64,000 nt of DNA from positions 1 through 64,000 of IMG/VR virus record IMGVR_UViG_3300027668_000008. The stretch is one strand, 5' to 3'. This document shows positions 36,478-54,706 of this stretch, in pieces. Under the pieces are notes generated by a model. That model was not told where the DNA came from. It made no database searches and saw only the letters and a list, made by a program, of their open reading frames with translations. Every line of letters begins with the position of its first letter. Within the stretch, counting starts at the first letter, position 1. Made by a program: the position numbers and the translations under genes.

Positions 36478-37383
36478 TTATGTTCCTATTGCATTTCCAA
36501 ACAAGTAAACGTGTACTCTTGCCGCTACATTGTAGCCACGTTTAAATGCCTTTTCAGCCACTGCACCTGCAGTAGTTGTTTGTTCTTCTTCCCTTGCACC
36601 TGTGGGCATAACCCAAATGGGCCAATCAACACCAGCGTCTTTAAACTTTGCTATTGCTTGTTCCATTTCTTCCCACTCTCTTTCTTTGTGTCCAACTACA
36701 AATTTAAGTTGTCCTTTACTAGAAAGTTCTCTATACTGCTTAACTATTTCTGGCTTAATAGCCTTCTCAGGTTTCTCACCTGATACTGTAAATAGTTTAG
36801 GACTACAAGAAAAGAATATTTCTATATCAATTCTGTTTACCCATTCAACAAACTCGGGTAGTAATTTTTGCGTACCATTTGTTTCAAATGTCATACTAGC
36901 AGGCAAGTTACCTTGTCTTTCAAGTTCTTCATATATACCAATTGTCGCCCGTTGTCCAGTAACCATCAAAGGTTCGCCACCTGTAATACATAAGTGCTGT
37001 CTTTGTTGTGTAACAGGATGTAGGAACAACCCTTCCGGATTGCTCTCATTTTTCATAACGTTAATAATCTTTTGTGCTAACACTGTGGGAGTTTCTTCTC
37101 CCATTAGTTTTTTAAACTTCTTTGCCCAGGTGTAACTACTGTCACAACCTTTATCCCAAACAGGTAAATCTTCTACACGTGATACACTATCAACATCAAA
37201 GTCTTCAAACGGTAATTCGTAAGTGTCAGGTTTTGTAGGATCTATTTGTCCAAATCCATTACACTGTAAGTTACACATGAAGAAACGTATCCAAGCAGTA
37301 GGAACACCTGTGTAATTCCCTTCGCCTTGTATACTATGAAATATCTCCGAATAGTAATACTTCTTTTCTTGTGTTACTGCCAT
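36478..37383 (-). CDS. queE: 7-carboxy-7-deazaguanine synthase (radical SAM)
   Basis: YSEIFHSIQGEG..G.P..WIRF..CNLQC...CDS; ITGGEP; ETNG; R.HV.LFG. Confidence 0.92.
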   Translation of the reverse strand: MAVTQEKKYYYSEIFHSIQGEGNYTGVPTAWIRFFMCNLQCNGFGQIDPTKPDTYELPFEDFDVDSVSRVEDLPVWDKGCDSSYTWAKKFKKLMGEETPTVLAQKIINVMKNESNPEGLFLHPVTQQRQHLCITGGEPLMVTGQRATIGIYEELERQGNLPASMTFETNGTQKLLPEFVEWVNRIDIEIFFSCSPKLFTVSGEKPEKAIKPEIVKQYRELSSKGQLKFVVGHKEREWEEMEQAIAKFKDAGVDWPIWVMPTGAREEEQTTTAGAVAEKAFKRGYNVAARVHVYLFGNAIGT

Positions 37384-37388
37384 TGTTT

Positions 37389-37838
37389 TTAACCTTTGTA
37401 AATTGCACTATTGGCACCATGCTCGGCACATTCAACTTTTACACAATAACATCTATTGTTTGTTGCTTCACGGATAAGTTTATCTGCAAAGTTAAAGGCG
37501 TGTTCGGCAAACTTCTCTGCACCAACACCGTCCATTACTACAATCTCTGCCAAGTCAAGTTCTTGTAGTTCCATAAACTTGTCCATGTGTGGATCGTCTT
37601 TGTCGATTGCTGTCTTGTGATCAAAGTTATCTTCTAACCATTTCTTCAAAGGTTTAAGTCCCCCAAAGTCTACTGCCCAGTTCTTTTTATCAAGTTCGCT
37701 ACAGCCAAAAGTAAATGTAAATGCTAAACTGTAACCATGTAGTAAATGACAATGGCTATGGTCTGCGTTAGGTTGTCTAAATACTGCCGACAATCCAATG
37801 TTATGTCCGTAATGCTTTGTGCTAAAATATTGTCCCAT
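37389..37838 (-). CDS. queD: 6-carboxytetrahydropterin synthase
   Basis: HCHLLHGY; DFGGLK; FDHK; terminal E..ANSA.Y. Confidence 0.88.
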   Translation of the reverse strand: MGQYFSTKHYGHNIGLSAVFRQPNADHSHCHLLHGYSLAFTFTFGCSELDKKNWAVDFGGLKPLKKWLEDNFDHKTAIDKDDPHMDKFMELQELDLAEIVVMDGVGAEKFAEHAFNFADKLIREATNNRCYCVKVECAEHGANSAIYKG

Positions 37839-37864
37839 GTATTAATACTCCTTAATTTATATAT

Positions 37865-37893
37865 ATTATACTACTATTTAGGTTCGTTGTCAA
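37865..37893 (-). promoter_or_regulatory. Sigma70-type promoter of queD-queE
   Basis: TTGACA-N17-TATAAT; AAGGAG RBS. Confidence 0.7.
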
Positions 37894-37900
37894 GGTAATT

Positions 37901-38884
37901 CTAATAATTCCAAACAGAACCAACATATCCTTTACCAGTAGTATCGCCAAATTCGTTATCTAATTCAACACCGTTATATGATATAGTAGTAATAATAGTA
38001 TCACCATTAGGCATTTCAGTTGCACTAATGTCAATCTTACTAACATCAAGTTGCTTACCTTCGGTTTTAACATAGACATCGTGGAATGTGCCTTTTTCAA
38101 TACTCATGAAGAAGAATACATAGTTGTTGCCATTTTCATCTGCATGAGCATCTAAATCCATATAATCAACTTTAATCTCTTTACCATTACGTTCTAATAG
38201 TTTATCTAAGGATTCGTTTTCAACGAGTGTCTCGATCCATTCGGTTCCCCAACTCTTGTCACTGTCTACTTCGTCAATTTCTATATGAACACCATTAGTA
38301 TCAACACCATTTGAATGTTCAATATCGTCTTTCTCATGCCATGCCATATGACATTCATGTTCTGGATCCCACATAAAGTCTGCTTCTTGTGGCATATCAT
38401 TATGCTTACGAAACTCTTCTGGATCATTTGCATAGTCTTCTAGTGTATTGAGATTCGGATTAAATGCATTGTCTTTTTTGTTTTTGTCCCAGTTATTCCA
38501 GAACTCAAATTGTTCTTTAGTTAACTTTGCATAAACACTTTCGCCACCGTAGCCATGTAACCTGATACGATAATGCCTTACTGGCTTCTTAATAACTTCA
38601 ATTAGTTCTTCGTGTGCTTCTTCAGTTGTTTGTACATCTGTAACATTGGCAACTTTAAAACTACGCCAACCTTTTGCATTAATATCATATACACCAATAT
38701 TCTCTAACTGTTTGGCACTTGGTTCTTTCTTTTCTTTAGTACCTTTTGGCATTGCTTCTTCGGGGATAAGTTTAGGATCAGTTGTGCAAGTCATAATGCG
38801 TTGATCACCATTTAGTTTAGTAAAGGTTACTATACTTTCACCTGTCCTAAGACGTTCCATTAATGTTTCTTTAGTATAACTCAT
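37901..38884 (-). CDS. Protein with N-terminal WYL-like/SH3 domain fused to an acidic unknown domain
   Basis: VTFTKLNG..R.MTCT...VYD....WRSF. Confidence 0.55.
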   Translation of the reverse strand: MSYTKETLMERLRTGESIVTFTKLNGDQRIMTCTTDPKLIPEEAMPKGTKEKKEPSAKQLENIGVYDINAKGWRSFKVANVTDVQTTEEAHEELIEVIKKPVRHYRIRLHGYGGESVYAKLTKEQFEFWNNWDKNKKDNAFNPNLNTLEDYANDPEEFRKHNDMPQEADFMWDPEHECHMAWHEKDDIEHSNGVDTNGVHIEIDEVDSDKSWGTEWIETLVENESLDKLLERNGKEIKVDYMDLDAHADENGNNYVFFFMSIEKGTFHDVYVKTEGKQLDVSKIDISATEMPNGDTIITTISYNGVELDNEFGDTTGKGYVGSVWNY

Positions 38885-39159: not shown

Positions 39160-39171
39160 TTTATTTCTCCT

Positions 39172-39660
39172 CTATTCCCATGGATAAACTAGCCAAACAT
39201 CTTCTTCGGCTTTATTAACTTCGTGTGCTTGATACCTAACGGAACCAAAGTCACTTGAATTATTTTCGGTTAGTACTGCAAATCTTACATTACTATCCCA
39301 TACTTTTTGTACTTCACCGACATCAACGGCTTTAGCCCAATCTTCACAAATCCAATTGAATGTTGCACCACTGTCATTGATATCATCGATAATCAATATC
39401 TTCTTACCTGCAAAAGCGTCTAGAGGCATCCAGGTATTACTTTCTGTTTTAATAAAAAGACCGTCCCTGTCACGCAACCTTACATCTAATGTGTACATAG
39501 GAATACCAGTTCTATTACTCATCATAATAGCAGGTGTTAATCCACCCCTGGTTAATCCTACAATGTATTCTGGTCTCCAGTCATCATTGTACATCTGTGT
39601 AATGATAGATGTAACCATCTTCTCTACATCATGCCAATCATATATATGTTTCTTTATCAT
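39172..39660 (-). CDS. Type I phosphoribosyltransferase (purine PRT/Gpt-like)
   Basis: VGLTRGG; ILIIDDINDSGAT PRPP-binding motif; W.VYPWE. Confidence 0.88.
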   Translation of the reverse strand: MIKKHIYDWHDVEKMVTSIITQMYNDDWRPEYIVGLTRGGLTPAIMMSNRTGIPMYTLDVRLRDRDGLFIKTESNTWMPLDAFAGKKILIIDDINDSGATFNWICEDWAKAVDVGEVQKVWDSNVRFAVLTENNSSDFGSVRYQAHEVNKAEEDVWLVYPWE

Positions 39661-39669: not shown

Positions 39670-40170
39670 TTAAATGTTATCTTCGCCTAAATACGTTTTG
39701 TGATCTGTCCAAACATACTTTACTGTTTTAGTTTTAAAATCTCCAAACATTTGATCAACTTTCTTTGGGTGAATAAAACCCCAGTCCTTACTTTTCTTAC
39801 CTGGAATAAAAATAGTCCAAGGTGTAATACCTGGCTCTAGTTCTACTCTGTGCATACTATCTGCCGTTGCTTTAATAAGAGATCCAGGACCTCTCCATTC
39901 TCTTGTTGATCCTACAACTGCTCCAGTCTCAGGTACTATAACTGGTACCCATTCGTGATAGCCACCTTTAAGAATAAATGTAGTATAACCCCATGGATGG
40001 TCATGTAAATGATCAGGATCACTTTTTACAAACTTGTGTAAAAATATGTTAAAAGGAAAGTTCTTTCTATCCTTAAGGAACAAGTAATACCTTTCTAAAT
40101 ACGGTTCACCTGTTTGCCTATCATTTATAATTCTATATCTTCCTAACCATGTCATTAACTTCTTAAACAT
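39670..40170 (-). CDS. Cupin-fold protein
   Basis: LHDHPW...ILKGGY.E; HRVEL. Confidence 0.7.
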   Translation of the reverse strand: MFKKLMTWLGRYRIINDRQTGEPYLERYYLFLKDRKNFPFNIFLHKFVKSDPDHLHDHPWGYTTFILKGGYHEWVPVIVPETGAVVGSTREWRGPGSLIKATADSMHRVELEPGITPWTIFIPGKKSKDWGFIHPKKVDQMFGDFKTKTVKYVWTDHKTYLGEDNI

Positions 40171-40179: not shown

Positions 40180-40752
40180 TTACTGCTTGTTCATCAAATC
40201 ATATGGAGTACTAATTACTCCAATTCTAGTTAGATTTGTATCTACTACTAGCATTTGTCCACTGTCTGCTTTGAAGCCTGGAAAAACACTGTTCATTACT
40301 TTGAAATGTGTAAAGACGAACAAGTTTCCTTTACCATCCCAACTCTTTATTAAATCTCTAATCTTATCAAACTCTTTTGTTTGTGAATCAAACAACTTAT
40401 TCTTTTTAAATTCTATTCCGGCATACTCGGCAGTTTGCCAACATCTACAAATAGGACTTGACCATGCCTTCTCAATTTTAATATTATGTTCTCTTAAGAA
40501 TACACCAATTGCTTTTGATTGTTTAATACCTTCTGACATTAAGTTTCTTTGGTTACCACATACCTTACTACTCTTGTCTTCGTTAATACCTTTTACTTTA
40601 GGTGCGTAGGCGTGTCTTACAAATACAATCATTCCACCTTTTTGCATTGATTCAATTGTTTCTGCTCTATTAAACTCGTTACTAAACCCCCAAGCATGAC
40701 TTGAAAGTGTCAATGTTGCAATTACTGTTGCTATTAATATTTTTTTAAACAT
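40180..40752 (-). CDS. Histidine phosphatase superfamily protein with signal peptide
   Basis: FVRHA; SSP..RC.QTA; FTH; N-terminal signal peptide. Confidence 0.8.
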   Translation of the reverse strand: MFKKILIATVIATLTLSSHAWGFSNEFNRAETIESMQKGGMIVFVRHAYAPKVKGINEDKSSKVCGNQRNLMSEGIKQSKAIGVFLREHNIKIEKAWSSPICRCWQTAEYAGIEFKKNKLFDSQTKEFDKIRDLIKSWDGKGNLFVFTHFKVMNSVFPGFKADSGQMLVVDTNLTRIGVISTPYDLMNKQ

Positions 40753-40754: not shown

Positions 40755-41051
40755 CTATCTATTTGCCCACCTTTCTTCCTGTTCTTTTCTTTCGATCAAT
40801 TTTAAATGTGCTGGTCTCATGCCATGTTTCTCTGTCATGTTAACAACTATCATTCCTTTTAACTCCATTAAAAGAGCATCATGTGGGTGCATAGGTTCAA
40901 TTTCATTACCTTCGTCCCAACTGTAAACTTGCCATTCAGGATCATATACTTCGTCTATAGGATCTAACTTACTACTAAACAATCCGTTTCTAAATGATAG
41001 TCTTAATTCTTCTAACGTTTGATCATTTGGCTTTTTAAAACTTGTATGCAA
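40755..41051 (-). CDS. Hypothetical protein
   Basis: ORF track. Confidence 0.55.
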   Translation of the reverse strand: MHTSFKKPNDQTLEELRLSFRNGLFSSKLDPIDEVYDPEWQVYSWDEGNEIEPMHPHDALLMELKGMIVVNMTEKHGMRPAHLKLIERKEQEERWANR

Positions 41052-43965: not shown

Positions 43966-44060
43966 TAACTTACTCCTAAACCAATTAAGAAAAATATAAA
44001 CCAAACTAGGAAAAGTGCTATTGCACTCTTCCATATAAACGATATTAAATCGTTTAACAT
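43965..44060 (-). CDS. 31-aa single-pass membrane peptide, not in the ORF track
   Basis: MLNDLISFIWKSAIALFLVWFIFFLIGLGVS; TAATG coupling at both ends. Confidence 0.55.
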   Translation of the reverse strand: MLNDLISFIWKSAIALFLVWFIFFLIGLGVS

Positions 44061-44980: not shown

Positions 44981-45589
44981 TTATTTTAACTTGTATTTCT
45001 TTTGTAGATGCTTGAGTAACAGACCATATGCTGGTAAGAATATGATTAAGCCTACTGCAATTTTAATTACAACTTGTGAACCTGCAATCTCAATCCAATT
45101 TGCCGCCATATATTCATCAGCACCGTTGTTAAATGCAACTGCAAAGAATGTGTAAGTATCGATGATGTTTGCCGCCACAGTTGATACCGCAGGTGCCAAC
45201 CACCAATTGTTCTTAAATCCTTCTCTGATGTATTGGAATACATATACATCAAGTAATGTACCTACTGCGTATGCAGTAGCACTTGCAAAGCCAATTCTTA
45301 ATGCAACAGATCCTGGTGCACCTTCGGCTAGTACAACTGCTATAGATCCAATAATTGCTAACGGATATGCCGCCGCAATAGTTTGCCTTGCAATGCTTTT
45401 GCCTAGTAACCTAACAGTTAAGTCTGTTGCAATTACTACTAATGGGAACGTGAATGCCGCCCATGTTAATTTTACTCCAAATATCTCTACTGGAATACCG
45501 ACCAATGCATTTGATACTGTAATCACAATAACGTGTAGTGCTACAAGTTTCATCAACATAGTTTTGTCTACGTTCTTAAAGTTAAACAT
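44981..45589 (-). CDS. yhhQ: Queuosine-precursor transporter (YhhQ/VUT family)
   Basis: VSNAL..P....TW.AFTFP...ATDLTVR..G...AR; RIG.ASA.AY..G.LLDV.VF; DTY.FF..AF. Confidence 0.88.
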   Translation of the reverse strand: MFNFKNVDKTMLMKLVALHVIVITVSNALVGIPVEIFGVKLTWAAFTFPLVVIATDLTVRLLGKSIARQTIAAAYPLAIIGSIAVVLAEGAPGSVALRIGFASATAYAVGTLLDVYVFQYIREGFKNNWWLAPAVSTVAANIIDTYTFFAVAFNNGADEYMAANWIEIAGSQVVIKIAVGLIIFLPAYGLLLKHLQKKYKLK

Positions 45590-46119: not shown

Positions 46120-46355
46120 TATACTAGTTCTTCTAATATGCCTAGTAATTCGGCAATTATGAATAAGATACCTGCCACCAAAAGATTACCGTAGAGGAGT
46201 GATCCTCCGGCGCCTATTCTTAAAAACGATTTGACCAAACTGACATAAAAATGGCCCATGCTTGGATCCTTTGGGGCAGGTGTTATCCCTTTGGGGGATT
46301 TTGGTTGTTCCGTAACTGGAACATAAACTCTCTCTGGTATTGGCATAGATGGCAT
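46119..46355 (-). CDS. Small membrane protein
   Basis: H.YVSLVKS.LRI..hydrophobic..AE.LG..EE. Confidence 0.6.
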   Translation of the reverse strand: MPSMPIPERVYVPVTEQPKSPKGITPAPKDPSMGHFYVSLVKSFLRIGAGGSLLYGNLLVAGILFIIAELLGILEELV

Positions 46356-46673
46356 CTATCCTCCGAAATAATGTTGAAATAGTCCTGCGACTAATAATGT
46401 TGTTAATGTTGCGTTTAGCATAGTAAGGGCTCTGTCATGCCAAAGCATACCTACCCAAAACCATCCTACTGTTCCTATTAAACTAAACCATAAGTCTATA
46501 AGAGGTATTGTACCTACACTTCTAGCCGCAACGGCAGTTAGTATAAAAAAACTTGCCGCCCACTTAATGTACCACGACAAGTCTCCTTTAGGTGTAATCT
46601 TTTTGAAGACTCTAGAGCTATTAAGTTTTGCTATTTTATCGTCAAGTTTTTCTTTAATCGGTTCTATTGTCAT
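46356..46673 (-). CDS. Three-TM small membrane protein
   Basis: W..VGMLWHDRAL..LN; paralog of 58219-58455. Confidence 0.65.
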   Translation of the reverse strand: MTIEPIKEKLDDKIAKLNSSRVFKKITPKGDLSWYIKWAASFFILTAVAARSVGTIPLIDLWFSLIGTVGWFWVGMLWHDRALTMLNATLTTLLVAGLFQHYFGG

Positions 46674-47136: not shown

Positions 47137-47823
47137 CTATCTAGGAGCAAACTCCTGTTGTAGTTTAATGTTATCGAAGAACTCTTGCTTTGTACCAGCG
47201 TCATTTGTAAATGCACCTTTAAGTACTGTAGTTTGTGTTAAACTACTGTGTGCCATAATGCCACGATTCTCACAACAACCATGTGTTGCTTGAATGTAAA
47301 CACCCACGTCTTCACTTCCAGTTGCATTCATAATTTCTCTAGCGATATTATTACAAAGTTCTTCTTGCAGTGTGCCACGTCTTGCACACCACTGAGCTAT
47401 ACGAGTGTATTTGCTCAACCCAATCAATTTCTCTGCCGCAAGTATTCCTATGTATGCGACACCAGTTACTGGTTGGTGGTGATGAGAACAGACACTTTTA
47501 AGTTCACTACGAACCACCAAAATACCTGTGTATGCATCTGCCATCTCTTGTGGAAATGCAGTTGCATTAGGCTTTGGAAAATAGCGTCCACTCATCAATT
47601 CGTTAATATACATTTTAGCAAGACGTCTACCAGTGTCGTTACTGTTAGGATCATTTTCTCTATCAATAAGCAAACTATCTAGTACACTACTGAACTTAGG
47701 TGTAAGTTCTTCGATTAGTTTCTCAGTATCACCATCTTCAAGATACTTGCTAATGTTATCTCCAGCCCAATAACGTCCTTTATCAGCCTGGATTCTTTTT
47801 TTAATTTCTTCACTTATACTCAT
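47137..47823 (-). CDS. folE: GTP cyclohydrolase I
   Basis: T..RLAKMY; SVCSHHHQP; GLSKY.RI; QE.L; HGC...RG. Confidence 0.95.
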   Translation of the reverse strand: MSISEEIKKRIQADKGRYWAGDNISKYLEDGDTEKLIEELTPKFSSVLDSLLIDRENDPNSNDTGRRLAKMYINELMSGRYFPKPNATAFPQEMADAYTGILVVRSELKSVCSHHHQPVTGVAYIGILAAEKLIGLSKYTRIAQWCARRGTLQEELCNNIAREIMNATGSEDVGVYIQATHGCCENRGIMAHSSLTQTTVLKGAFTNDAGTKQEFFDNIKLQQEFAPR

Positions 47824-47892: not shown

Positions 47893-48096
47893 TCAACCAA
47901 AATATTTGTTCAACATTTCAAGTCTGTCGTCAGCGGTAGCCATTTTATCTAATTCTTTTTGAACAGTTTCGATAATATCACTATGTTCACCGATGCCTAC
48001 CACAGATTGCATATATACTTCAATATTGGCTTTATGCAAATCTACTTCTGCTTCGGCGTGTTTCTTAGCCGCATTAATTATTATTTGTTTCAACAT
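47893..48096 (-). CDS. Small hypothetical protein
   Basis: H.ANIEVY....VGIGEHSDI. Confidence 0.65.
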   Translation of the reverse strand: MLKQIIINAAKKHAEAEVDLHKANIEVYMQSVVGIGEHSDIIETVQKELDKMATADDRLEMLNKYFG

Positions 48097-48448
48097 AACT
48101 TCCTTTCCTGTAATTGCCCTTCTCAGGTATAACGTGTCTTACGCCACCCCTTGGGTCTTCCATATCGCCTTTACGTCTTGGGATTAAATGTACATGAGGG
48201 TATTCAATAGTTTGTCCTGCTTCTGCTCCAACATTTTGTCCAATGTTATAAGCATCACAGTAACCATCTTTTACCCAACCATATCCCCAATTATAAGCGG
48301 CTTTATAGCATTTTTCTAAAGATGACCATTCGAGTAATTTAGGAACAAATAAGATATGTCCTTCTGTTACAGGGTAAGCATCTCTAAAGACTGTAAAATC
48401 TCGTGTATCAATTATTACGTCTGTCCATGGAATATCTTTAAATTCCAT
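48074..48448 (-). CDS. HIT-family nucleotide hydrolase
   Basis: DAYPVTEGH.LFVPK; GQT..YPHVHLIPRR.GD; likely ATG at 48448. Confidence 0.88.
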   Translation of the reverse strand: MEFKDIPWTDVIIDTRDFTVFRDAYPVTEGHILFVPKLLEWSSLEKCYKAAYNWGYGWVKDGYCDAYNIGQNVGAEAGQTIEYPHVHLIPRRKGDMEDPRGGVRHVIPEKGNYRKGSYVETNNN

Positions 48449-49532
48449 CGACACTAGCCTTGATAGCCTGATACAATTTGGTACCATCAAAGAAGTCTTT
48501 AAGTCGTTCTTTTAGTAAGTTGTTTGTTTCAACATACTTGTCATAGTTCTCAATCATATCAATAATCTTGTCTACGACTTCAGTAGGACTCTTTTCAAAA
48601 CCTTTTAAATTAACTGTTAAAGCACTTGCATATTTGAATTCATCTGGATACATTTCAAAGTAACTTAATCTATTAGGTACTAATGGTAATGTATCAACTA
48701 AACTACCTTCGTAAGCACTGATACCTAATGTTTCTTGCAAGTTAGCACTAAACACAATCTTTGCTTTACCGAGTAGTTCGTGGTATTCGTCTTTGCTTAA
48801 CTGCTTATCCTGACATACAATAAATTCATAGTCTGGTAATAGTTCTTTTAGTTTAGCAAAGATCTCTGGATTCTTCTCAGGTGCTACTCTGTGCGGAAAC
48901 AATATAATGTTTTCTTTTTTAGCACCAGCAAACGGTTGCAGTGTATCTGTTAGATACTCCATGGGCCAACCAACAATCTGCATCTTACCTACTTCTAAAT
49001 TCTGATCAATATCCTTTGTATCAGTTAAGAAACTTTGTGCAAACAAGTCTACATGGAATCGTGTAGCAAAGTAATTATGGTCATAACATTCGAACATACT
49101 TGCTTCTGCGTAACGTACCCAAGGTTTAGCACCAATCAATCTTCCTAAGAAGTCTGCTGGATCATAACTACCGGCGTGCCACATACCACCAATTTTAATA
49201 TTGATACCTAGTAGTTCTGCCATATACTTTAACTGTATTACTGTAGGGTTCCATGCATCAGTGTACAAGAAGTAATCGCCGTCTTTAACTTTACCACTTG
49301 CAACTAGTTCAGCAATTTGCAACATCTGTTGACTTTTGTAACTGTTAGTTCCTGCAAAGTTTAAAAATGCACCAGGTGTAGTAGTCTGTGGAACATCTCC
49401 ACCACTAATAACTTCTACGTTATAATCCTCTGTACCAAAGTACTCAGACATTTGTTTAGGTAAATGTTTCTTCCACTGAGCCGTGTAACGTGTTTCGACT
49501 GGCTCTAAGTCTACTATATATACTGTTTTCAT
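48438..49532 (-). CDS. GT-B fold glycosyltransferase (GT4-like)
   Basis: FPHR.APEK; QETLGISAYEG (E-x7-E); VPNRLSY.EM; likely ATG at 49532. Confidence 0.8.
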   Translation of the reverse strand: MKTVYIVDLEPVETRYTAQWKKHLPKQMSEYFGTEDYNVEVISGGDVPQTTTPGAFLNFAGTNSYKSQQMLQIAELVASGKVKDGDYFLYTDAWNPTVIQLKYMAELLGINIKIGGMWHAGSYDPADFLGRLIGAKPWVRYAEASMFECYDHNYFATRFHVDLFAQSFLTDTKDIDQNLEVGKMQIVGWPMEYLTDTLQPFAGAKKENIILFPHRVAPEKNPEIFAKLKELLPDYEFIVCQDKQLSKDEYHELLGKAKIVFSANLQETLGISAYEGSLVDTLPLVPNRLSYFEMYPDEFKYASALTVNLKGFEKSPTEVVDKIIDMIENYDKYVETNNLLKERLKDFFDGTKLYQAIKASVDGI

Positions 49533-49539
49533 TTTTATC

Positions 49540-49920
49540 CTATTCATGTTCTCCACCAGGATCATTTGGATCTAGTGGAACTTTTTGAGCAATACCATTC
49601 TTATCACGGAATATAATAGAACCTCTACCTCTACCGTAAGAATGATATCCATTTTTAAATTTAAACGCATTTGGAATTTTTTCTGCTACTCTAAATGTGG
49701 CAACGGTAACAACTACTGCTCCTACAAATAATGCGTGTCCGATTGCACTATACATAAAAACCCATATGTTGTTGACAATAATGATTGCAAATACAGTTGA
49801 CCACATAAATGCGAGTATTTGCATCACCATATGTCTAACTTGTAAATCGGGAATAGCTCTTAATGGATTCTTGTTATGATCCATAATAGTATTCCACGAT
49901 TCAAAGATAAATTCTCTCAT
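49540..49920 (-). CDS. Two-TM membrane hypothetical protein
   Basis: NPL..IPD..VRHM.MQILA.MW. Confidence 0.6.
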   Translation of the reverse strand: MREFIFESWNTIMDHNKNPLRAIPDLQVRHMVMQILAFMWSTVFAIIIVNNIWVFMYSAIGHALFVGAVVVTVATFRVAEKIPNAFKFKNGYHSYGRGRGSIIFRDKNGIAQKVPLDPNDPGGEHE

Positions 49921-50143: not shown

Positions 50144-50605
50144 TTAATTCCTTGTATACTCATATTTCGCTAAAGATCCGTTTTCCCCGTCCTCACTTAC
50201 TTCAATTTCTACAGTACGTTCAGGGTAACGGGATTGTATCATGCCAAATAAATCATCAGACATCATTTCACAAGATTTGTAATCTAACTCTAATGTTTTT
50301 TCTGCATATAATTTTTCAAGCCAACGTTTGAATTGAATAAATTCAATATCTCTGTCGTCGTGGAATACTTCTATTGCCACTTTAAAATGAAAAATATGTC
50401 TATGAGGATAGCCTAAAAAACTAACATCATATTCATCTCCTGTTGCTAGTTTAGGATCATCTAATGCGGCAGGGTATTTGTGTATACCTTCCTTCTTAAA
50501 TGTAACCCAGATCATTTTACTAGCGGATTCAATTTGCTTTTTTTGTGCGTCTTGTATAGCCGCCGCTCTCATGTCGCTAATCATATCGTCTATGTATCTT
50601 CCCAT
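50144..50605 (-). CDS. QueD-paralog T-fold protein, DpdL-like (predicted CDG decarboxylase)
   Basis: LGYPHRHIF (LxxxHRHxF); DRDIEF; SCEM; VSEDGENG; lacks the QueD catalytic Cys motif; promoter TTGACA-N17-TATAAT at 50625-50653. Confidence 0.65.
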   Translation of the reverse strand: MGRYIDDMISDMRAAAIQDAQKKQIESASKMIWVTFKKEGIHKYPAALDDPKLATGDEYDVSFLGYPHRHIFHFKVAIEVFHDDRDIEFIQFKRWLEKLYAEKTLELDYKSCEMMSDDLFGMIQSRYPERTVEIEVSEDGENGSLAKYEYTRN

Positions 50606-50840: not shown

Positions 50841-51386
50841 TTATTCAATAAATGTGTCGCCAACGTACTTGTCCCAATCTGAAAATGTTTTACGATTAAT
50901 AACATCTTCCATAGGAACACACCATACACCAGGATTTGTGGCATTAAAGTCTGTGTCATCAAACTTTATAGTTGTATTATGGTTCCATTGTTGCCAATAG
51001 CCAAGTTTTAGACTTTGCATAGGAATGAAGCGTCTATCTTCAACCCAACCCATTTCTAAAATATCTTTACCATATTCCATTAGATCAAAATCTAATGTAA
51101 CCCATAAGTCTGCTTTAAGCAATCCTGAGATGTAATTATTCCAATCAGTCCAGTCACCGTTTGTTACTGGTTTAAATGTTGTGCCTGTGCCTAAATAGAT
51201 GTGTTTAATATCATGATTGGTTGCGTGTTCAATAGTTCTATTTAAGTCTTGTATACCGCATACAAACAATGTCTTTTCACCGTACATAGGAGTCTTTTCA
51301 ACTTCTTTGTTCATAAAGAACTTTGCTTTATCAGTTGTAACTTCGCCACCTTTTAGTGTAGCATACGTTCGCATCATTTGTTTCAT
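50841..51386 (-). CDS. Hypothetical protein in the deazaguanine cluster
   Basis: EVEKTPMYGEKTLFV; HIYLG; IKFDDTDF.ATNPGVWC. Confidence 0.65.
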   Translation of the reverse strand: MKQMMRTYATLKGGEVTTDKAKFFMNKEVEKTPMYGEKTLFVCGIQDLNRTIEHATNHDIKHIYLGTGTTFKPVTNGDWTDWNNYISGLLKADLWVTLDFDLMEYGKDILEMGWVEDRRFIPMQSLKLGYWQQWNHNTTIKFDDTDFNATNPGVWCVPMEDVINRKTFSDWDKYVGDTFIE

Positions 51387-52373
51387 CTATTTACTCTCTG
51401 TTTCGTCAACTATACGTTGAGCTCTGGTTTTTTCATACAGTTTGTACATATGCTTATTCCAAGTAATGTAGCCTCTACTGTATCCTTCTGGACGATTGTT
51501 GCCGTCAACAAATGCTTGTTCCCATTCCATATCTCTATCATAACTTTTTGTCCAAAAGCCATCTATGTTTAAGATACCTGTACTAATTAAGGAAACTGCA
51601 TCTCCCATACTACTATGAAAGTTTGGGTTTCTAGGACTTGGAAAGTCCATACTTGCATTTTTCCATAACAAGTTACCAAATGTAGTAGTAATTCCTTTTT
51701 TCTCTGCCGCTAGTATAATCAATGCATTCTCATTAATTATATCGCCATCAAATACAAGTGTGCTATCATCTTTCAAATCTATCACTACATCATACTTGCC
51801 GTTAGGTTCTGATATTAATCTATCTTCCCAAAACTTTCTATTATGAGAACCTAGCACATCAACATCATCTGCTAAACGTAATACTTTTAATTTTGTGTAA
51901 ACAACTGTTGCTAAAAAGCCACTGCCTATAATTAAAATACGTTGTCGTTGTCCTTTAAACTTTGCCATACCTGACATATAGTTTAACTTGTCTAAGTTAC
52001 TTGTAACTATATTAATACCACAAGCCACAGGCTCTATAATGTATTTAGGATCAGCATCTGGCACAACTACATATTCGTTATGTCTAACGTTGTAATAATC
52101 TGCATATGCAGGTTCACCTCTAGTAGCAACAATGTCGCCTACCTTAGTGTCTGTAATCTCTTTACCAATTTTTGTAACTTGACCTAGTCCTTCATGTCCT
52201 TGCATATTTAAAGGCAATGGACCAAAGTTACCATTCATCATATCAATGTCACTACGACAAATGCCAGTCATTAAAGCCATAACTTCAATTTCTTCATTTC
52301 CTACATTAGGTTTGTTCCATTCGATTTCTTCGAACTTTCCATTGCCTGTTGTTTGTAATAGTTTTACTAGCAT
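51387..52373 (-). CDS. Medium-chain (Zn-dependent) alcohol/polyol dehydrogenase-like protein
   Basis: GICRSD; GHEGLG.V..IG; VGDIV; IEPVAC; IIGSG. Confidence 0.82.
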   Translation of the reverse strand: MLVKLLQTTGNGKFEEIEWNKPNVGNEEIEVMALMTGICRSDIDMMNGNFGPLPLNMQGHEGLGQVTKIGKEITDTKVGDIVATRGEPAYADYYNVRHNEYVVVPDADPKYIIEPVACGINIVTSNLDKLNYMSGMAKFKGQRQRILIIGSGFLATVVYTKLKVLRLADDVDVLGSHNRKFWEDRLISEPNGKYDVVIDLKDDSTLVFDGDIINENALIILAAEKKGITTTFGNLLWKNASMDFPSPRNPNFHSSMGDAVSLISTGILNIDGFWTKSYDRDMEWEQAFVDGNNRPEGYSRGYITWNKHMYKLYEKTRAQRIVDETESK

Positions 52374-53242
52374 AGTTCTTCCATTTGTTTATGTATCCAC
52401 ATATCCTTTGTAAATTGATCTTCCCAATATTCATTATTATGCAGGTTTTCTAGTCCAATGTCAATCATTCTTTTGTATGCTTCTTCAGGACATAAGCCTA
52501 ATTCTACACGTTCTATATGACCAAGTATTTCAAAGTTAATCCCGACATCATCGTATAAGTCTGTTTTCCAATTAGCGAGTAAGTTGTATTGACAAAACTT
52601 TGTCTTATATCCCATACCTGCTTCATCATCTACATCATATACTCCATCGGGATCAACTGTGCCATAATCTGTATCAAGTAATCCTTTAAGATCCCAATTA
52701 GTTCTTGCTATTTTATCTGATGGAAGAGTATTAGCATAACTAGGATTGAATACTTGATAAAGGCTTAACAAGTGTGGAAGTAAATCTCTACTTACTCCGC
52801 CATATGCTAATTCTTTTGTTGTAAACCAACTACCCGGATTAGGTACTCTGTTTTTGTTTTGCCAATGAATGTCAACTACACGACTTGTTCTTGCCATATT
52901 AATAAGTTCATCTATGTTGTGTCTAAACTGATTATTCTTTACCATAGATATTCTACACTCTGGAAAGTCATAGTGCAAATCTGACCATGCTTTCGAAGTA
53001 GATAATCCAGGCTTTTCAATAAACATTAAATGACACCAGGGAGCGATAAACCTTGCAAGTTCTTCGTGGGTTTCATTTGGCGTACAGATATGTACAGTGT
53101 CGTACATATCAATTGGTACATCTTGAATAGTCTTAAAATCAGCAGGTCTATTTGGGTCAACTGTTACAACATCGATACCCATTTCTGTTAGTACCTTCAT
53201 GTATAGTTGCCCAATACCCATACCTACTATAAGACTTTTCAT
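52367..53242 (-). CDS. Gfo/Idh/MocA-family NAD(P) oxidoreductase
   Basis: IVGMGIG; ICTPN.TH; FIEKP; GGV.RDL.PH. Confidence 0.85.
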   Translation of the reverse strand: MKSLIVGMGIGQLYMKVLTEMGIDVVTVDPNRPADFKTIQDVPIDMYDTVHICTPNETHEELARFIAPWCHLMFIEKPGLSTSKAWSDLHYDFPECRISMVKNNQFRHNIDELINMARTSRVVDIHWQNKNRVPNPGSWFTTKELAYGGVSRDLLPHLLSLYQVFNPSYANTLPSDKIARTNWDLKGLLDTDYGTVDPDGVYDVDDEAGMGYKTKFCQYNLLANWKTDLYDDVGINFEILGHIERVELGLCPEEAYKRMIDIGLENLHNNEYWEDQFTKDMWIHKQMEELC

Positions 53243-54706
53243 TTATACCTCAAACAAACTGTTAAATTGTGCAGAACTGTTAATAGTTTTCTTACCAACT
53301 GCTCCACGTGTTCCAACGACCTTCATCCATAGTTTAGTGTGTTCATCTACTAATGCAAGTGCTTGGTCTTTGTTATCAAGTTCAAATATTCTAGCAATAA
53401 CATCTTTAACTTCTTGTTTATCGAATGTATCGTTAACAAGCATATTAGGATAGTTACCACCGTCATACTGTCTATTTGCTTCTTGTACACTATTAATGTG
53501 TGTATATACATTATGGTTCATCATAAGTGCATATGCAAACGAATCCCAACTAGTTTTAGTCGATACACCCATTCTATTAACATCTGTTGGACTGTAAATA
53601 CAAACGTCATTTACTTTTAGTCCTTGTGTAATAGGAGTAGGCATCCAGTTCATTCCTTGTTTATTAAAGAAGTCTGTTGCTAAATCATCGTAGGGTCTAG
53701 TGTCAGTACTATATGCTTTGTCATCTGGTGCCGGCGACATCATATAACTCCACTTTTCATCTTGTACTGTTCTATGTCCTGTATAGACTTGACCATTTGC
53801 AGTACATAAGAACGGACTTGCACAATCAAATGTTACTGTGAAGTTCTCATTATGGTTCTTACGAATACCACGTTGTATTGCAGTTAGTACTAGTGCCCAT
53901 TCAAGTTTACTAGTTCCTAAGAAGTGCATAACATCTTGTTTACCTTTTTCAAGTAAACCGTCAAACCTTAGTTCAATTACACGTTTCAATGCTAGATGCA
54001 AGTCGCACATATTCTGTCCGCCCATTGCCCAACCGTTAAAATGTGTATCTGGGTACAATCGGTGATCACTGTACTTCTTCATTTGCTGATACCAATCATC
54101 GGCTTGTGCAAAGTTTTCACCTTGTAGTACATTTAAGAACTTACAGTTACCATTACGGTTTTTAATAAAGTATTCGTTATTAAATTGTGTGCCTTCAACT
54201 GCTTCTTGATATGAACTAATTTTACTTTTTTCTGCACCTTCAGGACTACGTCCTACCCATGCCGGAATATCTAAAATCATTCCATAGTCCATGAACTTGT
54301 CCATCCACTTTAGAACACCATCACGTTTCTTTTGTGCTTGAGCACAACCGCTATTTGCTCTCCAGTCACCTTCCCACTTGCCTTTACCAATTTGGAAACC
54401 ACCTGAGTCTCCTAGTAACCAACTGTGTTCTCGGTTCCTGTCTCTGTACATATCTTCACGATACATATCCTTTTCCAAGTCTAGACTGGCATGACCAGCC
54501 GAGTGCAATGACCATTTGTATTTCCATAGACCTTCTGGTGCCAACCAGTTCATACTTTCAACACCGTGTGGAAGAAAACTAGGAACACGATTATAATCAA
54601 TATATTCGTGCCTACGTTGTCTGCCTACAAAGAGTGCGTAGAATGTACTTAATGCTGGCAGAAATACTGCGTAGTCATTTTGTGCATCTGTAAGGTTAGT
54701 CTTCAT
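53243..54706 (-). CDS. dpdA: Guanine transglycosylase (TGT fold), DpdA-like
   Basis: LGDSGGFQ; MILDIP; LNVLQG; AMGG; HFLG; TFDCAS; no CxCxxC Zn site as in tRNA TGTs. Confidence 0.72.
   Translation of the reverse strand: MKTNLTDAQNDYAVFLPALSTFYALFVGRQRRHEYIDYNRVPSFLPHGVESMNWLAPEGLWKYKWSLHSAGHASLDLEKDMYREDMYRDRNREHSWLLGDSGGFQIGKGKWEGDWRANSGCAQAQKKRDGVLKWMDKFMDYGMILDIPAWVGRSPEGAEKSKISSYQEAVEGTQFNNEYFIKNRNGNCKFLNVLQGENFAQADDWYQQMKKYSDHRLYPDTHFNGWAMGGQNMCDLHLALKRVIELRFDGLLEKGKQDVMHFLGTSKLEWALVLTAIQRGIRKNHNENFTVTFDCASPFLCTANGQVYTGHRTVQDEKWSYMMSPAPDDKAYSTDTRPYDDLATDFFNKQGMNWMPTPITQGLKVNDVCIYSPTDVNRMGVSTKTSWDSFAYALMMNHNVYTHINSVQEANRQYDGGNYPNMLVNDTFDKQEVKDVIARIFELDNKDQALALVDEHTKLWMKVVGTRGAVGKKTINSSAQFNSLFEV

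What the first reader, a model, noticed from the sequence alone, without database searches (positions are those of the whole stretch)
36478..54706. 7-deazaguanine DNA-modification pathway without QueC but with a DpdL-like QueD paralog
Seen: folE, queD, queE, yhhQ, a second T-fold protein with LxxxHRHxF, and a TGT-fold enzyme lacking the tRNA-TGT Zn site, placed directly after polymerase and clamp. No queC, queF or arcS is in the window. Established: FolE-QueD-QueE make CDG, DpdA enzymes swap 7-deazaguanines into DNA, and DpdL is the predicted CDG decarboxylase giving 7-deazaguanine. Inference: the genome carries dDG, dCDG or a derivative, inserted around replication.
Basis: partly seen in the sequence, partly recalled or inferred. 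Interest (0 to 1): 0.65.

Follow-up and report, generated by a model that had tools for sequence, protein, structure and literature searches.

The report
Phage 7-deazaguanine DNA-modification gene module
An uncultured jumbo phage carries, next to its DNA polymerase, genes to make a 7-deazaguanine base without the usual QueC step and to swap it into DNA; this pathway type was described in 2023, but here it comes with conserved extra enzymes, including a sugar transferase, whose role is unknown.

Summary
On the minus strand of 36.5-58.2 kb lie PolB, a clamp-sized protein, a 487-aa TGT-fold enzyme, a DpdL-type QueD paralog (FLGYPHRHIFHF), FolE, YhhQ, QueD and a QueE-like radical SAM enzyme.

- **TGT-fold enzyme:** it has no Pfam, PHROG or NCBIfam hit. 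A high-confidence model matches only the TGT/DpdA superfamily. The three catalytic aspartates are kept. The CxCxxC zinc site is absent in all 62 aligned relatives.
- **Known precedent:** this is the QueC-independent DpdL pathway described for Cellulophaga phage phiST (dDG) and Acidovorax phage ACP17 in 2023.
35 related viral contigs, and in part PA5oct, ACP17 and Phosso, share a wider colinear module with a 181-aa unknown, a GT4-like glycosyltransferase, a purine phosphoribosyltransferase and a HIT protein. The final base may therefore be more than plain dDG.
- **QueC elsewhere:** a divergent QueC-like PP-loop gene lies about 111 kb into the genome, among tRNA genes. It is unlinked to the module and does not look like a pathway member.
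- **Natural comparison:** Vibrio phage 2.275.O has the same backbone with QueC and QueF in place of DpdL.

Verdict: a new member of a known kind, of moderate interest.

The parts
55515..58172 (-). Family-B DNA polymerase; upstream anchor of the module
   Evidence: PF00136 E 8e-32 and PF03104 E 4e-20. 49% identical to Phosso PolB, 47% to PA5oct, 42% to Vibrio phage 2.275.O.
54718..55464 (-). Clamp-sized protein (248 aa) that always follows PolB; clamp identity not confirmed
   Evidence: Only phrog_12062, unknown function. No Pfam hit. No PDB profile hit. Present in 33 of 35 related loci. Its Phosso homolog is labelled sliding clamp by the depositor; its PA5oct homolog is labelled structural protein.
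53243..54706 (-). TGT-fold, DpdA-like transglycosylase without the zinc site (487 aa); proposed to exchange guanine in DNA for the 7-deazaguanine base
   Evidence: No Pfam, PHROG, NCBIfam or PDB sequence hit. AF2 pLDDT 92.4. Foldseek top hits are Z. mobilis TGT, E 6e-7. VIA-align: ArcTGT Z 18.8, QTRT2 17.8, bacterial TGT 17.1, DpdA 7ui4 16.2, Cap10 14.5, then generic TIM barrels at 11.8 or less. D100 (DSGGFQ), D146 (LDIP) and D294 (FDC) are invariant or nearly so. 0 of 62 relatives have CxCxxC.
52367..53242 (-). GFO/IDH/MocA-like oxidoreductase (291 aa); accessory
   Evidence: Weak PF01408 and PF22725 matches, below cut-off. Present with the next gene in 12 of 16 long related loci.
51387..52373 (-). 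Zn-alcohol-dehydrogenase-like (MDR) oxidoreductase (328 aa); accessory
   Evidence: PF08240 E 4e-10. phrog_2640. Present in 12 of 16 long loci. Not homologous to ACP17 gp124 or PA5oct 0317.
50841..51386 (-). Conserved 181-aa protein of unknown function ('o181'), always between the transglycosylase and DpdL
   Evidence: No family hit. Present in 30 of 30 loci with at least 2.5 kb downstream. Homolog of ACP17 gp122, 28% identity, E 8e-10. AF2 pLDDT 91.6. No PDB match above noise, best Z 6.0. Weak resemblance to the QueE barrel: PDB QueE Z 5.4-5.8, Atlas QueE clusters TM 0.55. It lacks a cluster motif, having only two Cys.
50144..50605 (-). DpdL-type QueD paralog; proposed 7-carboxy-7-deazaguanine decarboxylase
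   Evidence: Motif FLGYPHRHIFHF. phrog_17812 E 4e-34. 57.5% identical to ACP17 DpdL, 34.5% to phiST DpdL. Alignment with QueD shows Leu in place of the QueD Cys. Family definition in PMC10516641.
48438..49565 (-). GT4-like glycosyltransferase; the true start is probably the ATG at residue 12 (49532)
   Evidence: PF00534 weak, 20.7 bits. Atlas clusters named viral glycosyltransferase family 1, score 1.00. EX7E pair E278/E286 invariant. Adjacent to DpdL in PA5oct, ACP17, Phosso and BUCT-ZZ01; within 4 kb in X1, BUDD and BCSR5. Present in 16 of 16 long related loci.
48074..48490 (-). HIT-family nucleotide hydrolase/transferase; the true start is probably the ATG at residue 15 (48448)
   Evidence: PF01230 E 4e-10. 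Profile versus PDB: Fhit/Hint-type proteins, best E 8e-12. YPHVHLIPRR is conserved. Present in 12 of 16 long loci.
47137..47823 (-). FolE, GTP cyclohydrolase I; first step from GTP
   Evidence: PF01227 E 3e-37. NCBIfam FolE models E 1e-38, below their cut-offs. Present in 16 of 16 long loci.
44981..45589 (-). YhhQ/Vut_1 membrane transporter (queuosine-precursor transporter family)
   Evidence: PF02592 E 2e-25. 40.5% identical to the YhhQ in the 7-deazaguanine cluster of Vibrio phage 2.275.O. Found near the module only in the closest relatives.
39670..40170 (-). Cupin-type protein (166 aa); accessory
   Evidence: phrog_4786 E 2e-33. Sits next to the PRTase in 7 related loci.
39172..39660 (-). 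Purine (Gpt-like) phosphoribosyltransferase
   Evidence: PF00156 E 4e-12. Profile versus PDB: purine PRTase 1vdm E 3e-19, E. coli XGPRT E 1e-9. Present in 10 of 16 long loci.
37389..37838 (-). QueD, 6-carboxytetrahydropterin synthase
   Evidence: PF01242 E 1e-14. phrog_2389 E 7e-41. Only PTPS match in the whole genome. Keeps the Cys of CxxxHG.
36478..37383 (-). QueE-like radical SAM enzyme (301 aa, divergent); proposed 7-carboxy-7-deazaguanine synthase
   Evidence: phrog_2076 E 2e-54. EIFHSIQGEG and C37-x3-C41 followed by C80 in GCDSSY, that is a 38-residue insert in the cluster loop. NCBIfam QueE models hit only residues 9-42. 42.5% identical to the 2.275.O homolog, 36% to PA5oct QueE.

Best explanation
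This is a phage module for replacing guanine in the phage's own DNA with a 7-deazaguanine made without QueC.

- **Base synthesis.** FolE, QueD and the QueE-like radical SAM enzyme turn GTP into 7-carboxy-7-deazaguanine (CDG). This is established chemistry for these families, assigned here by homology. The DpdL-type QueD paralog then converts CDG to 7-deazaguanine. This step is a literature prediction and has never been shown biochemically.
- **Insertion.** The 487-aa DpdA-like transglycosylase lacks the zinc site and is encoded directly after the polymerase and a clamp-sized protein. It is proposed to exchange guanine in newly made phage DNA for this base by the double-displacement mechanism of TGT/DpdA, using D294 as nucleophile and D100 as acid/base (inferred).
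- **Accessory genes (all inferred).** The Gpt-like PRTase most simply recycles the released guanine to GMP, and so back to the GTP precursor. YhhQ imports precursor bases. The GT4-like transferase, the HIT protein, the 181-aa protein and the two oxidoreductases either decorate the inserted base further or supply a donor for that.
- **Likely benefit.** Resistance to restriction enzymes that read G.
For: - **Gene identities:**
- **DpdL homology and motif:**. Family definition, and dDG at 100% in phiST, which has FolE, QueD, QueE, DpdL and DpdA3 but no QueC: PMC10516641.
- **Transglycosylase:** TGT/DpdA fold, standing well above generic TIM barrels. The viral library ranks phage TGT/DpdA-like proteins, including nt-1 (E 6e-10) and phiST (E 1e-3). 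Three aspartates are conserved; these are invariant in TGT and DpdA according to PMC10164549. hhalign to the ACP17 DpdA gives 96.5%, E 1e-9.
- **Colinear module in 35 related viral contigs:** among the 16 loci with at least 9.5 kb downstream, o181, DpdL, GT and FolE occur in 16, QueE in 12, and the QueC-like gene in 0.
- **Same order in PA5oct**. [quoted passage not shown]
- **Natural swap:** Vibrio phage 2.275.O has the homologous PolB, clamp-sized gene, transglycosylase, YhhQ, FolE and QueE backbone, but with QueC, QueF and an amidotransferase-like gene in place of o181, DpdL and GT.
- **Nothing else for the branch in the genome:** no QueF, no Pfam TGT and no second PTPS in the 307-kb record.
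- **tRNA target unlikely:** the eight phage tRNAs have no GUN anticodon.
Against: - No chemistry is available for this phage.
- DpdL activity has never been shown. Expression of phiST and ACP17 dpdL with their dpdA in E. coli gave no dDG (PMC10516641).
- The QueE-like protein is divergent and falls far below the NCBIfam QueE cut-offs.
- The transglycosylase lacks the structural zinc site, which is conserved in tRNA TGTs and bacterial DpdA.
- The conserved purine PRTase and HIT protein fit a nucleotide-level route at least as well as a salvage role.
- A QueC-family ORF exists elsewhere in the genome.
- The record is only 87% complete.
Confidence: 0.7

Rival explanations
1. Pre-replicative route. 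The 7-deazaguanine base (or CDG) is attached to PRPP by the Gpt-like PRTase, as in toyocamycin and tubercidin biosynthesis. It is then processed to the deoxynucleoside triphosphate and incorporated by the phage PolB. The TGT-fold enzyme would only clean up residual G or act on another substrate.
For: A purine PRTase (1vdm E 3e-19, XGPRT E 1e-9) and a Fhit/Hint-like HIT nucleotide enzyme are conserved inside the module. A MazG-family pyrophosphatase exists in the genome. PRTases acting on 7-deazapurine bases are known from actinomycete nucleoside pathways (my own knowledge, not checked here).
Against: The PRTase is present in only 10 of 16 long related loci. It was not found in the ACP17 or Phosso clusters examined. 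The transglycosylase is present in all loci and is fixed next to PolB. Every phage with a 7-deazaguanine in its DNA encodes a DpdA-type enzyme according to PMC10516641. No dedicated kinase or dGTPase was seen in the module.
Confidence: 0.15
2. The QueC-like PP-loop protein at genome position 110987-111574 completes a classical branch. CDG would then be converted to preQ0 or the amide (ADG), and that base, not 7-deazaguanine, would be inserted.
For: PF06508 scores 41.8 bits, above the 22-bit cut-off. The protein has an SGGADS PP-loop and a QueC-type C-terminal four-Cys motif. A profile of the family hits B. subtilis QueC 3bl5 at E 4e-4. Campylobacter phages use a QueC variant for dADG (PMC10516641).
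Against: Only the C-terminal 63 Pfam positions match. The best PDB hit is the CBASS protein Cap9, not QueC. There is no homolog in 50,697 phage records, so PA5oct, ACP17 and Phosso lack it. It is absent within 10 kb of the module in all 35 relatives. It lies among tRNA genes with a methyltransferase, an oxygenase-like gene and a radical SAM gene. In other phages the family sits in radical-SAM and aminotransferase clusters without FolE, QueD or QueE. It does not match the true QueC of phage 2.275.O at E 0.01. No QueF was found.
Confidence: 0.08
3. The transglycosylase modifies tRNA (host or phage) rather than DNA, so the module is a translation-tuning auxiliary pathway.
For: The fold is shared with tRNA TGTs; ArcTGT and bacterial TGT score slightly higher than DpdA. 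YhhQ belongs to the queuosine-precursor transporter family (my own knowledge of the family; Pfam hit).
Against: It occupies a fixed position in the replication module. The phage tRNAs have no GUN anticodon. The zinc subdomain of tRNA TGTs is lost. It is remotely homologous to the DpdA of ACP17, which is itself about 34-36% identical to the nt-1/KVP40 transglycosylase-like proteins. PA5oct DNA is restriction-resistant. Small phages carry the enzyme alone, a pattern I recall being reported for phage DpdA but did not check here.
Confidence: 0.04

Closest known systems
Cellulophaga phage phiST 7-deazaguanine (dDG) system: FolE, QueD, QueE, DpdL, DpdA3 (Cui et al. 2023, PMC10516641)
   Same: FolE, QueD, QueE and a DpdL with LxxxHRHxF, no QueC in the cluster, a remote TGT-like enzyme, and a position beside the polymerase genes.
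   Different: - The phiST enzyme is 259 aa. Its similarity to the window's 487-aa family is barely detectable (hhalign 52%, Foldseek E 1e-3).
- phiST has a MazG-like gene.
- phiST has no glycosyltransferase, PRTase, HIT or o181 homolog.
- DpdL identity is only 34.5%.
Acidovorax phage ACP17 cluster: QueD, FolE, gp122, gp123 (DpdA), gp124, gp125 (DpdL), QueE
   Same: DpdL 57.5% identical. GT homolog (gp124) 40% identical and adjacent to DpdL. An o181 homolog (gp122) sits before the transglycosylase. The cluster is next to the polymerase.
   Different: The ACP17 transglycosylase is about 34-36% identical to the transglycosylase-like proteins of Vibrio phages nt-1, KVP40 and VH7D, which I recall being classed as DpdA2. 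It is only a remote homolog of the window's enzyme (BLASTP E 0.05; hhalign 96.5%). No PRTase, HIT or oxidoreductase homologs were found in its cluster.
Pseudomonas jumbo phage PA5oct (Wroclawvirus), EST35_0311-0323
   Same: The order is the same: PolB, clamp-sized gene, transglycosylase (34% identical), GT (45%), DpdL (56%), a weak PRTase-like gene, QueE (36%). Its DNA resists restriction enzymes that recognise G, and a 7-deaza-G modification is predicted for it (PMC12191111).
   Different: The PA5oct version is compact, with no o181, oxidoreductase, HIT or YhhQ hits in the locus. The identity of its base has not been published in the papers I could read.
Vibrio phage 2.275.O cluster (PolB, clamp-sized gene, transglycosylase, QueF, YhhQ, QueC, amidotransferase-like gene, FolE, QueE)
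   Same: PolB, the clamp-sized gene, the transglycosylase, YhhQ, FolE and QueE are homologous and in the same order.
   Different: It uses the classical QueC and QueF branch, so preQ0/preQ1 type is expected. It has no DpdL, GT or o181.
Bacterial Dpd system, DpdA (PDB 7ui4) with DpdB and DpdC
   Same: TIM-barrel transglycosylase fold (Z 16.2) and the three active-site aspartates.
   Different: Bacterial DpdA keeps the CXCX2CX22H zinc site, needs DpdB and inserts preQ0. The window's enzyme has no such motif, and no DpdB or DpdC homolog was noted.

Membership tests
DpdL (proposed CDG decarboxylase, QueD paralog) | Signature LxxxHRHxF in place of the QueD motif CxxxHGH | tested here: met
   FLGYPHRHIFHF at residues 63-74. 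It is aligned in register with ACP17 YLGSPHRHLFKF and phiST FLSLNHRHLFGI. Leu replaces the QueD Cys. Definition in PMC10516641.
DpdL (proposed CDG decarboxylase, QueD paralog) | Sequence homology to the named DpdL proteins | tested here: met
   tblastn gives 57.5% identity to ACP17 (E 8e-39) and 34.5% to phiST CGPG_00067 (E 9e-9). Pfam PTPS itself does not detect the protein, so the T-fold assignment rests on this homology and on the alignment with QueD.
DpdL (proposed CDG decarboxylase, QueD paralog) | Genomic context: FolE, QueD, QueE and a DpdA-type enzyme, without QueC | tested here: met
   All are present in the module. No QueC lies within the window or within 10 kb in 35 relatives. An unlinked divergent QueC-like ORF exists at 111 kb.
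DpdL (proposed CDG decarboxylase, QueD paralog) | CDG decarboxylase activity | not testable with these tools
   Never shown for any member. The heterologous test failed in PMC10516641.
TGT/DpdA transglycosylase superfamily | TGT-type TIM-barrel fold | tested here: met
   AF2 pLDDT 92.4. The top five representative PDB matches are all TGT, QTRT2, DpdA or Cap10 (Z 14.5-18.8), against 11.8 or less for other barrels. Foldseek E 6e-7.
TGT/DpdA transglycosylase superfamily | Three invariant active-site aspartates (acid/base, base recognition, nucleophile) | tested here: met
   D100 in DSGGFQ and D146 in LDIP align to the TGT DSGGYQ and FDEC motifs in the profile alignment. D294 in FDC is invariant in 62 sequences. 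Its equivalence to the nucleophile rests on motif resemblance, not on superposed coordinates. Their role is described in PMC10164549.
TGT/DpdA transglycosylase superfamily | Structural zinc site CxCxxC...H | tested here: not met
   0 of 62 family members have CxCxxC. Only H398 (55 of 62) and C369 (38 of 62) are partly conserved. The site is conserved in tRNA TGTs and bacterial DpdA.
Named phage DpdA subfamilies (DpdA1-DpdA4) | Detectable sequence membership in one subfamily | tested here: inconclusive
   No PHROG or Pfam TGT hit. hhalign gives 52% to phiST DpdA3 and 96.5% over the core only to the ACP17 enzyme. The Foldseek viral ranking puts nt-1 (E 6e-10) above phiST (E 1e-3). The subfamily tables of Cui et al. 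were not available. No tree was built.
Named phage DpdA subfamilies (DpdA1-DpdA4) | DNA, not tRNA, as substrate | not testable with these tools
   Supported only by context: replication-module position, the restriction resistance of PA5oct and the absence of GUN tRNAs.
QueE (7-carboxy-7-deazaguanine synthase) | Radical SAM cluster cysteines and the QueE N-terminal motif | tested here: inconclusive
   EIFHSIQGEG and C37-x3-C41 are present, but the third Cys (C80) follows a 38-residue insert. phrog_2076 E 2e-54. NCBIfam QueE equivalogs score 39 bits against cut-offs of 200-300.
QueC (preQ0 synthase), for the ORF at genome 110987-111574 | Full-length QueC profile match with PP-loop and C-terminal zinc cysteines | tested here: inconclusive
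   The PP-loop SGGADS and the motif SCE...C..C..C are present. The Pfam match covers only positions 146-208 of 210. PDB profile hits are Cap9 at 2e-4 and QueC at 4e-4. Its context is tRNA genes and unrelated enzymes.
GT4-type (GT-B, retaining) glycosyltransferase, for 48438-49565 | EX7E motif and a Glycos_transf_1 domain | tested here: inconclusive
   E278-x7-E286 is invariant in 15 sequences. PF00534 scores 20.7 bits against a cut-off of 26.4. Atlas neighbours are named viral glycosyltransferase family 1. No PDB sequence hit. No structure was predicted.

The most novel reading that the evidence does not exclude
In the DpdL modules that carry the adjacent GT4-like transferase (this clade, PA5oct, ACP17, Phosso, BUCT-ZZ01, X1/BUDD, BCSR5), the inserted 7-deazaguanine is further decorated, most likely with a sugar. 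The donor would be tailored by the HIT protein and the oxidoreductases. This would be a glycosylated purine analogue in DNA, a class of modification I do not know to have been reported. The enzyme that inserts it would be a zinc-less DpdA clade outside the subfamilies I could compare.
Probability: 0.25. Interest if true: 0.85.

Novelty: new member of a known kind. Interest (0 to 1): 0.5.

Why it matters
**What this instance adds.** The QueC-independent DpdL route to 7-deazaguanine DNA is known from one measured phage group (phiST). A second phage fully substituted with 7-deazaguanine, VP1, is reported in a preprint. The window shows that the route sits in a large clade of uncultured jumbo phages. 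There it is welded to the polymerase gene, and a DpdA-like enzyme is used that standard family models miss.

**What the comparison adds.**
- DpdL is usually paired with a GT4-like transferase.
- In this clade, and in ACP17, it is also paired with a 181-aa protein.
- The only reported functional test of DpdL expressed it with DpdA alone, and it failed.
- These partners are therefore concrete candidates for the missing components.
- Cultured phages with the same module (PA5oct, ACP17) make the question directly testable by mass spectrometry.

Tried and rejected
- **Single-sequence PDB searches** with the 487-aa protein and with DpdL gave no hit. The profile search with the 487-aa family gave only sub-threshold TGT rows (E about 1), used only to read motif register.
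- **The search for related loci with the 62-sequence alignment** failed for lack of conserved stretches. The single protein worked.
- **An ADH-like conserved partner in ACP17 and PA5oct** was considered and rejected. Their middle genes are homologs of the glycosyltransferase, not of the ADH-like protein.
- **A DpdA-DpdL fusion in Bakedbeans gp176** was considered and rejected. Its N-terminal part matches neither phiST DpdA3 nor the 487-aa family.
- **Complex prediction of the transglycosylase with o181** gave no verdict (score 0.00, mark 0.32). This is not evidence either way.
- **The fold of o181** has no PDB match above noise. The QueE-like resemblance is weak and is only a lead. The feature-based Atlas hits were below 0.9.
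- **The clamp** could not be confirmed by a profile search against PDB.
- **A hydroxymethyl-pyrimidine pathway as the target of the glycosyltransferase** is unlikely. No thymidylate-synthase-like gene is in the record.
- **Literature not held:** the supplementary tables of Cui et al. and the 2024 MMBR review. I could not see which DpdA subfamily those authors assign to PA5oct or ACP17.
- **Not done:** no read mapping, and no genetic code other than table 11 was needed.

Full report
**Setting.** The window is the first 64 kb of a 306,714-base IMG/VR virus record that is linear and estimated 87% complete. From about 21 kb onward the genes lie on the minus strand. The polymerase places the phage among jumbo phages related to Sinorhizobium phage Phosso, Agrobacterium phage Atu_ph07, Vibrio phage 2.275.O and the 121Q/Rak2-like coliphages, at 41-49% identity. 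No phage record matches at the DNA level.

Family searches confirm the following genes.
- QueE-like radical SAM protein, 36478-37383: phrog_2076 E 2e-54.
- QueD, 37389-37838: PF01242 E 1e-14 and phrog_2389 E 7e-41.
- YhhQ/Vut_1, 44981-45589.
- FolE, 47137-47823: PF01227 E 3e-37.
- PolB, 55515-58172.

The second QueD-like protein is the 153-aa ORF at 50144-50605. It carries FLGYPHRHIFHF.

The 'TGT-fold enzyme' is the 487-aa ORF at 53243-54706. It has no hit in Pfam, PHROGs, NCBIfam or PDB sequences. The Pfam TGT model finds nothing in the whole genome.

The 248-aa protein between it and PolB could not be confirmed as a clamp. I keep the label only as 'clamp-sized'.

**The 487-aa protein is a DpdA-like transglycosylase without the zinc site.**
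- An exhaustive HMMER search found 926 relatives.
- An alignment of 62 full-length relatives shows invariant D100-S-G-G (in DSGGFQ), D146 (LDIP), H261-x-L-G and D294 (FDC).
- The profile aligns these, below significance but in register, to the DSGGYQ, FDEC, QQG and GYAVGG motifs of Z. mobilis TGT.
- An AlphaFold2 model (pLDDT 92.4) gives TGT as the Foldseek top hit at E 6e-7.
- In a representative-wide structural search the first five rows are archaeosine TGT (Z 18.8), QTRT2 (17.8), bacterial TGT (17.1), the DNA preQ0 insertase DpdA 7ui4 (16.2) and Cap10 (14.5). There is then a gap to generic TIM barrels at 11.8 or less.
- The three aspartates correspond to those reported as invariant and catalytic in TGT and DpdA (PMC10164549).
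- None of the 62 sequences has the CxCxxC zinc motif. That motif is conserved in tRNA TGTs and bacterial DpdA.
- Against viral models, the nearest named proteins are phage TGT-like proteins, including Vibrio phage nt-1 (E 6e-10). The phiST enzyme is far weaker (E 1e-3).
- hhalign gives 96.5% (E 1e-9, catalytic core) to ACP17 gp123 and 52% to phiST DpdA3.
- ACP17 gp123 is itself 34-36% identical to the nt-1/KVP40/VH7D enzymes. I recall these being classed as DpdA2.

I could not assign the window's enzyme to a named subfamily. The published tables were not available.

**DpdL.** Cui et al. 2023 define DpdL as a QueD paralog with LxxxHRHxF. It is found in phages with FolE, QueD, QueE and a DpdA but no QueC, and it is proposed to decarboxylate CDG. 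phiST DNA has dG fully replaced by dDG. The window's protein is 57.5% identical to the ACP17 DpdL and 34.5% to the phiST DpdL. It aligns with them over its full length, with Leu in place of the QueD cysteine. Membership by sequence is therefore met. The activity has never been demonstrated for any member.

**Is QueC really missing?** No QueC, QueF or second PTPS lies in the window. Outside it, at 110987-111574, is a 195-aa PP-loop protein.
- It has SGGADS and a QueC-type C-terminal cysteine motif.
- It passes the Pfam QueC cut-off, but only over the last 63 model positions.
- Its family profile hits the CBASS protein Cap9 (2e-4) slightly better than QueC (4e-4).
- It has no homolog in 50,697 phage records.
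- It lies between phage tRNA genes, beside a methyltransferase, an oxygenase-like gene and a radical SAM gene.
- In other phage contigs the family sits among radical SAM, aminotransferase and SPASM genes without FolE, QueD or QueE.
- One partial relative genome has it at 82% identity. The others are too fragmentary to judge.

I consider it unlikely to belong to this pathway, with about 8% left for that rival.

Thirty-five IMG/VR contigs encode a 51-100% identical transglycosylase. Mapping the window's proteins onto them gives one colinear order:

PolB, clamp-sized gene, transglycosylase, [GFO-like, ADH-like], o181, DpdL, GT, [cupin], PRTase, HIT, FolE, QueE, (QueD).

| Gene | Present among the 16 loci with at least 9.5 kb downstream |
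|---|---|
| o181, DpdL, GT, FolE | 16 each |
| QueE | 12 |
| GFO-like and ADH-like pair | 12 |
| HIT | 12 |
| PRTase | 10 |
| Cupin | 4 |
| YhhQ | 3 |
| QueC-like | 0 |

- The window differs from compact relatives mainly by insertions, among them a 999-aa subtilase, membrane proteins and a WYL_2 protein.
- The PRTase is a purine, Gpt-like enzyme (1vdm E 3e-19; E. coli XGPRT E 1e-9).
- The HIT protein is Fhit/Hint-like, with the nucleophile histidine context YPHVHLIPRR.
- The GT has an invariant EX7E pair, and its Atlas neighbours are viral family-1 glycosyltransferases.
- o181 gives a confident model with no PDB match above noise. It weakly resembles the QueE barrel but has no cluster cysteines.

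**Cultured phages show the same couplings.**
- PA5oct has PolB, the clamp-sized gene, the transglycosylase (34%), GT (45%), DpdL (56%), a weak PRTase-like gene and QueE, in that order.
- ACP17 has QueD, FolE, an o181 homolog, its DpdA, GT, DpdL and QueE.
- Phosso has PolB, a clamp, a small gene, DpdL, GT, FolE and QueE, with the transglycosylase elsewhere.
- Across the phage collection, DpdL hits fall in about twelve lineages. The GT is adjacent to DpdL or within 4 kb in six of them: PA5oct group, ACP17, Phosso, BUCT-ZZ01, X1/BUDD and BCSR5. It was not found in phiST, RHph_I1_18 or Bakedbeans.
- The main text of Cui et al. never mentions a glycosyltransferase.

**A natural swap.** Vibrio phage 2.275.O has homologs of PolB, the clamp-sized gene, the transglycosylase, YhhQ (40.5%), FolE (54%) and QueE (42.5%), in the same order. 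Between them are QueF, QueC and an amidotransferase-like gene, with no DpdL, GT or o181. This ties the unannotated transglycosylase family to 7-deazaguanine pathways independently of DpdL. It also shows that DpdL and its partners occupy the place of the QueC/QueF branch. More distant members of the family occur alone in phage contigs of about 33 kb that carry integrases and no synthesis genes. This is what would be expected if those phages draw on a base made by the host.

**Mechanism.**
- Assigned by homology: GTP goes to CDG via FolE, QueD and the QueE-like enzyme.
- Predicted in the literature: CDG goes to 7-deazaguanine by DpdL.
- Inferred from fold, catalytic residues and context: the DpdA-like enzyme exchanges guanine in phage DNA at or just after replication.
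- Inferred only: the PRTase recycles the excised guanine into the GTP pool that feeds FolE, and the GT, HIT, o181 and oxidoreductase genes further modify the base or build a donor.

A tRNA target is unlikely. The eight phage tRNAs have no GUN anticodon. PA5oct DNA resists restriction enzymes that recognise G and is sensed by defence nucleases that target modified G (PMC12191111). A nucleotide-level route through the PRTase remains the main rival. No thymidylate-synthase-like gene exists that would give the GT a hydroxymethyl-pyrimidine target.

**Comparison and novelty.** The finding is the DpdL-type 7-deazaguanine DNA pathway of Cui et al. 2023. Full substitution by 7-deazaguanine has since been reported for a Vibrio phage, VP1 (bioRxiv 10.1101/2025.10.29.685425). 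This window is a new, uncultured jumbo-phage member of that kind. Two things are not described in the papers I could read:
- the zinc-less long DpdA-like clade fixed next to PolB;
- the conserved pairing of DpdL with the GT (in this clade and six cultured lineages) and with o181 (in this clade and ACP17).

These pairings make the GT and o181 candidates for the components missing from the failed reconstitution. They also raise the possibility of a decorated 7-deazaguanine.

**Limits.**
- No chemistry was available.
- The record is incomplete.
- No subfamily tree was built.
- The glycosyltransferase was not folded, because the structure jobs were exhausted.
- The complex prediction for the transglycosylase with o181 gave no verdict.

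Noticed in passing
window 1636-17448 (+), and genome 290924-304578 (+): The Pfam Radical_SAM model matches 13 places in the genome. Eight are large paralogous ORFs (357-506 aa) in a row at 1.6-17.5 kb. Four are at 291-305 kb, which would be adjacent if the genome is circularly permuted. This is a striking array of radical SAM enzymes of unknown role. Several are homologous to radical SAM genes that flank the QueC-like gene in a T4-like contig.
   Followed up: partly
genome 106743-112846 (outside the window; L002): A cluster lies between phage tRNA genes (Gln, Leu and Trp at 108.5-109.0 kb; Arg-TCT at 112.77 kb). It holds a radical SAM gene (337 aa), a SAM methyltransferase (181 aa), an Asp/Arg-hydroxylase-like gene (274 aa), the short QueC-like PP-loop protein (195 aa) and a 377-aa unknown. 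This may be a tRNA- or small-molecule-modifying set.
   Followed up: partly
L006-L008 (metagenomic T4-like contigs): The short QueC-like family (190-220 aa; invariant SCE...C..CWWC.E) recurs in a conserved block: radical SAM, QueC-like, a 323-aa gene, an aminotransferase and a radical SAM/SPASM gene. It lies near 2OG-oxygenase and carbamoyltransferase genes, with no FolE, QueD or QueE. This looks like an uncharacterised biosynthetic module.
   Followed up: partly
window 41035-44034 (-): A 999-aa subtilase (PF00082 E 1e-31) is inserted in the middle of the 7-deazaguanine module. It was found only in the closest relatives, so it is probably an unrelated insertion.
   Followed up: no
window 37901-38884 (-), 40180-40752 (-), 45631-46673 (-): Other genes are interleaved with the module: a WYL_2 protein (327 aa), a His_Phos_1 phosphatase with a hydrophobic N-terminus (190 aa), a weak MCD-like 162-aa protein, and the small membrane proteins DUF6552 and a 78-aa ORF. 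They are conserved only in close relatives.
   Followed up: no
L055:8212-9363 (Vibrio phage Bakedbeans gp176): Here the DpdL domain is the C-terminal third of a 383-aa protein. The N-terminal 260 residues match neither phiST DpdA3 nor the 487-aa transglycosylase family, so this is a DpdL fusion to an unknown domain.
   Followed up: partly
L059, L060 (ENA contigs of about 33 kb): A 443-aa member of the transglycosylase family (35% identical) sits in small phage contigs with integrases and podovirus-type head genes. There are no 7-deazaguanine synthesis genes within 10 kb.
   Followed up: no
window 48074-48490 and 48438-49565 (-): The longest-ORF starts of the HIT and GT genes are probably too far upstream. 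Relatives and the Atlas record begin at the ATG of residue 15 (HIT, about 48448) and of residue 12 (GT, about 49532).
   Followed up: yes
genome 97139-97342 (-): A MazG-family pyrophosphohydrolase (136-aa ORF, PF03819 33.6 bits) lies outside the window. phiST has a MazG-like gene beside its DpdL, but here it is unlinked.
   Followed up: no
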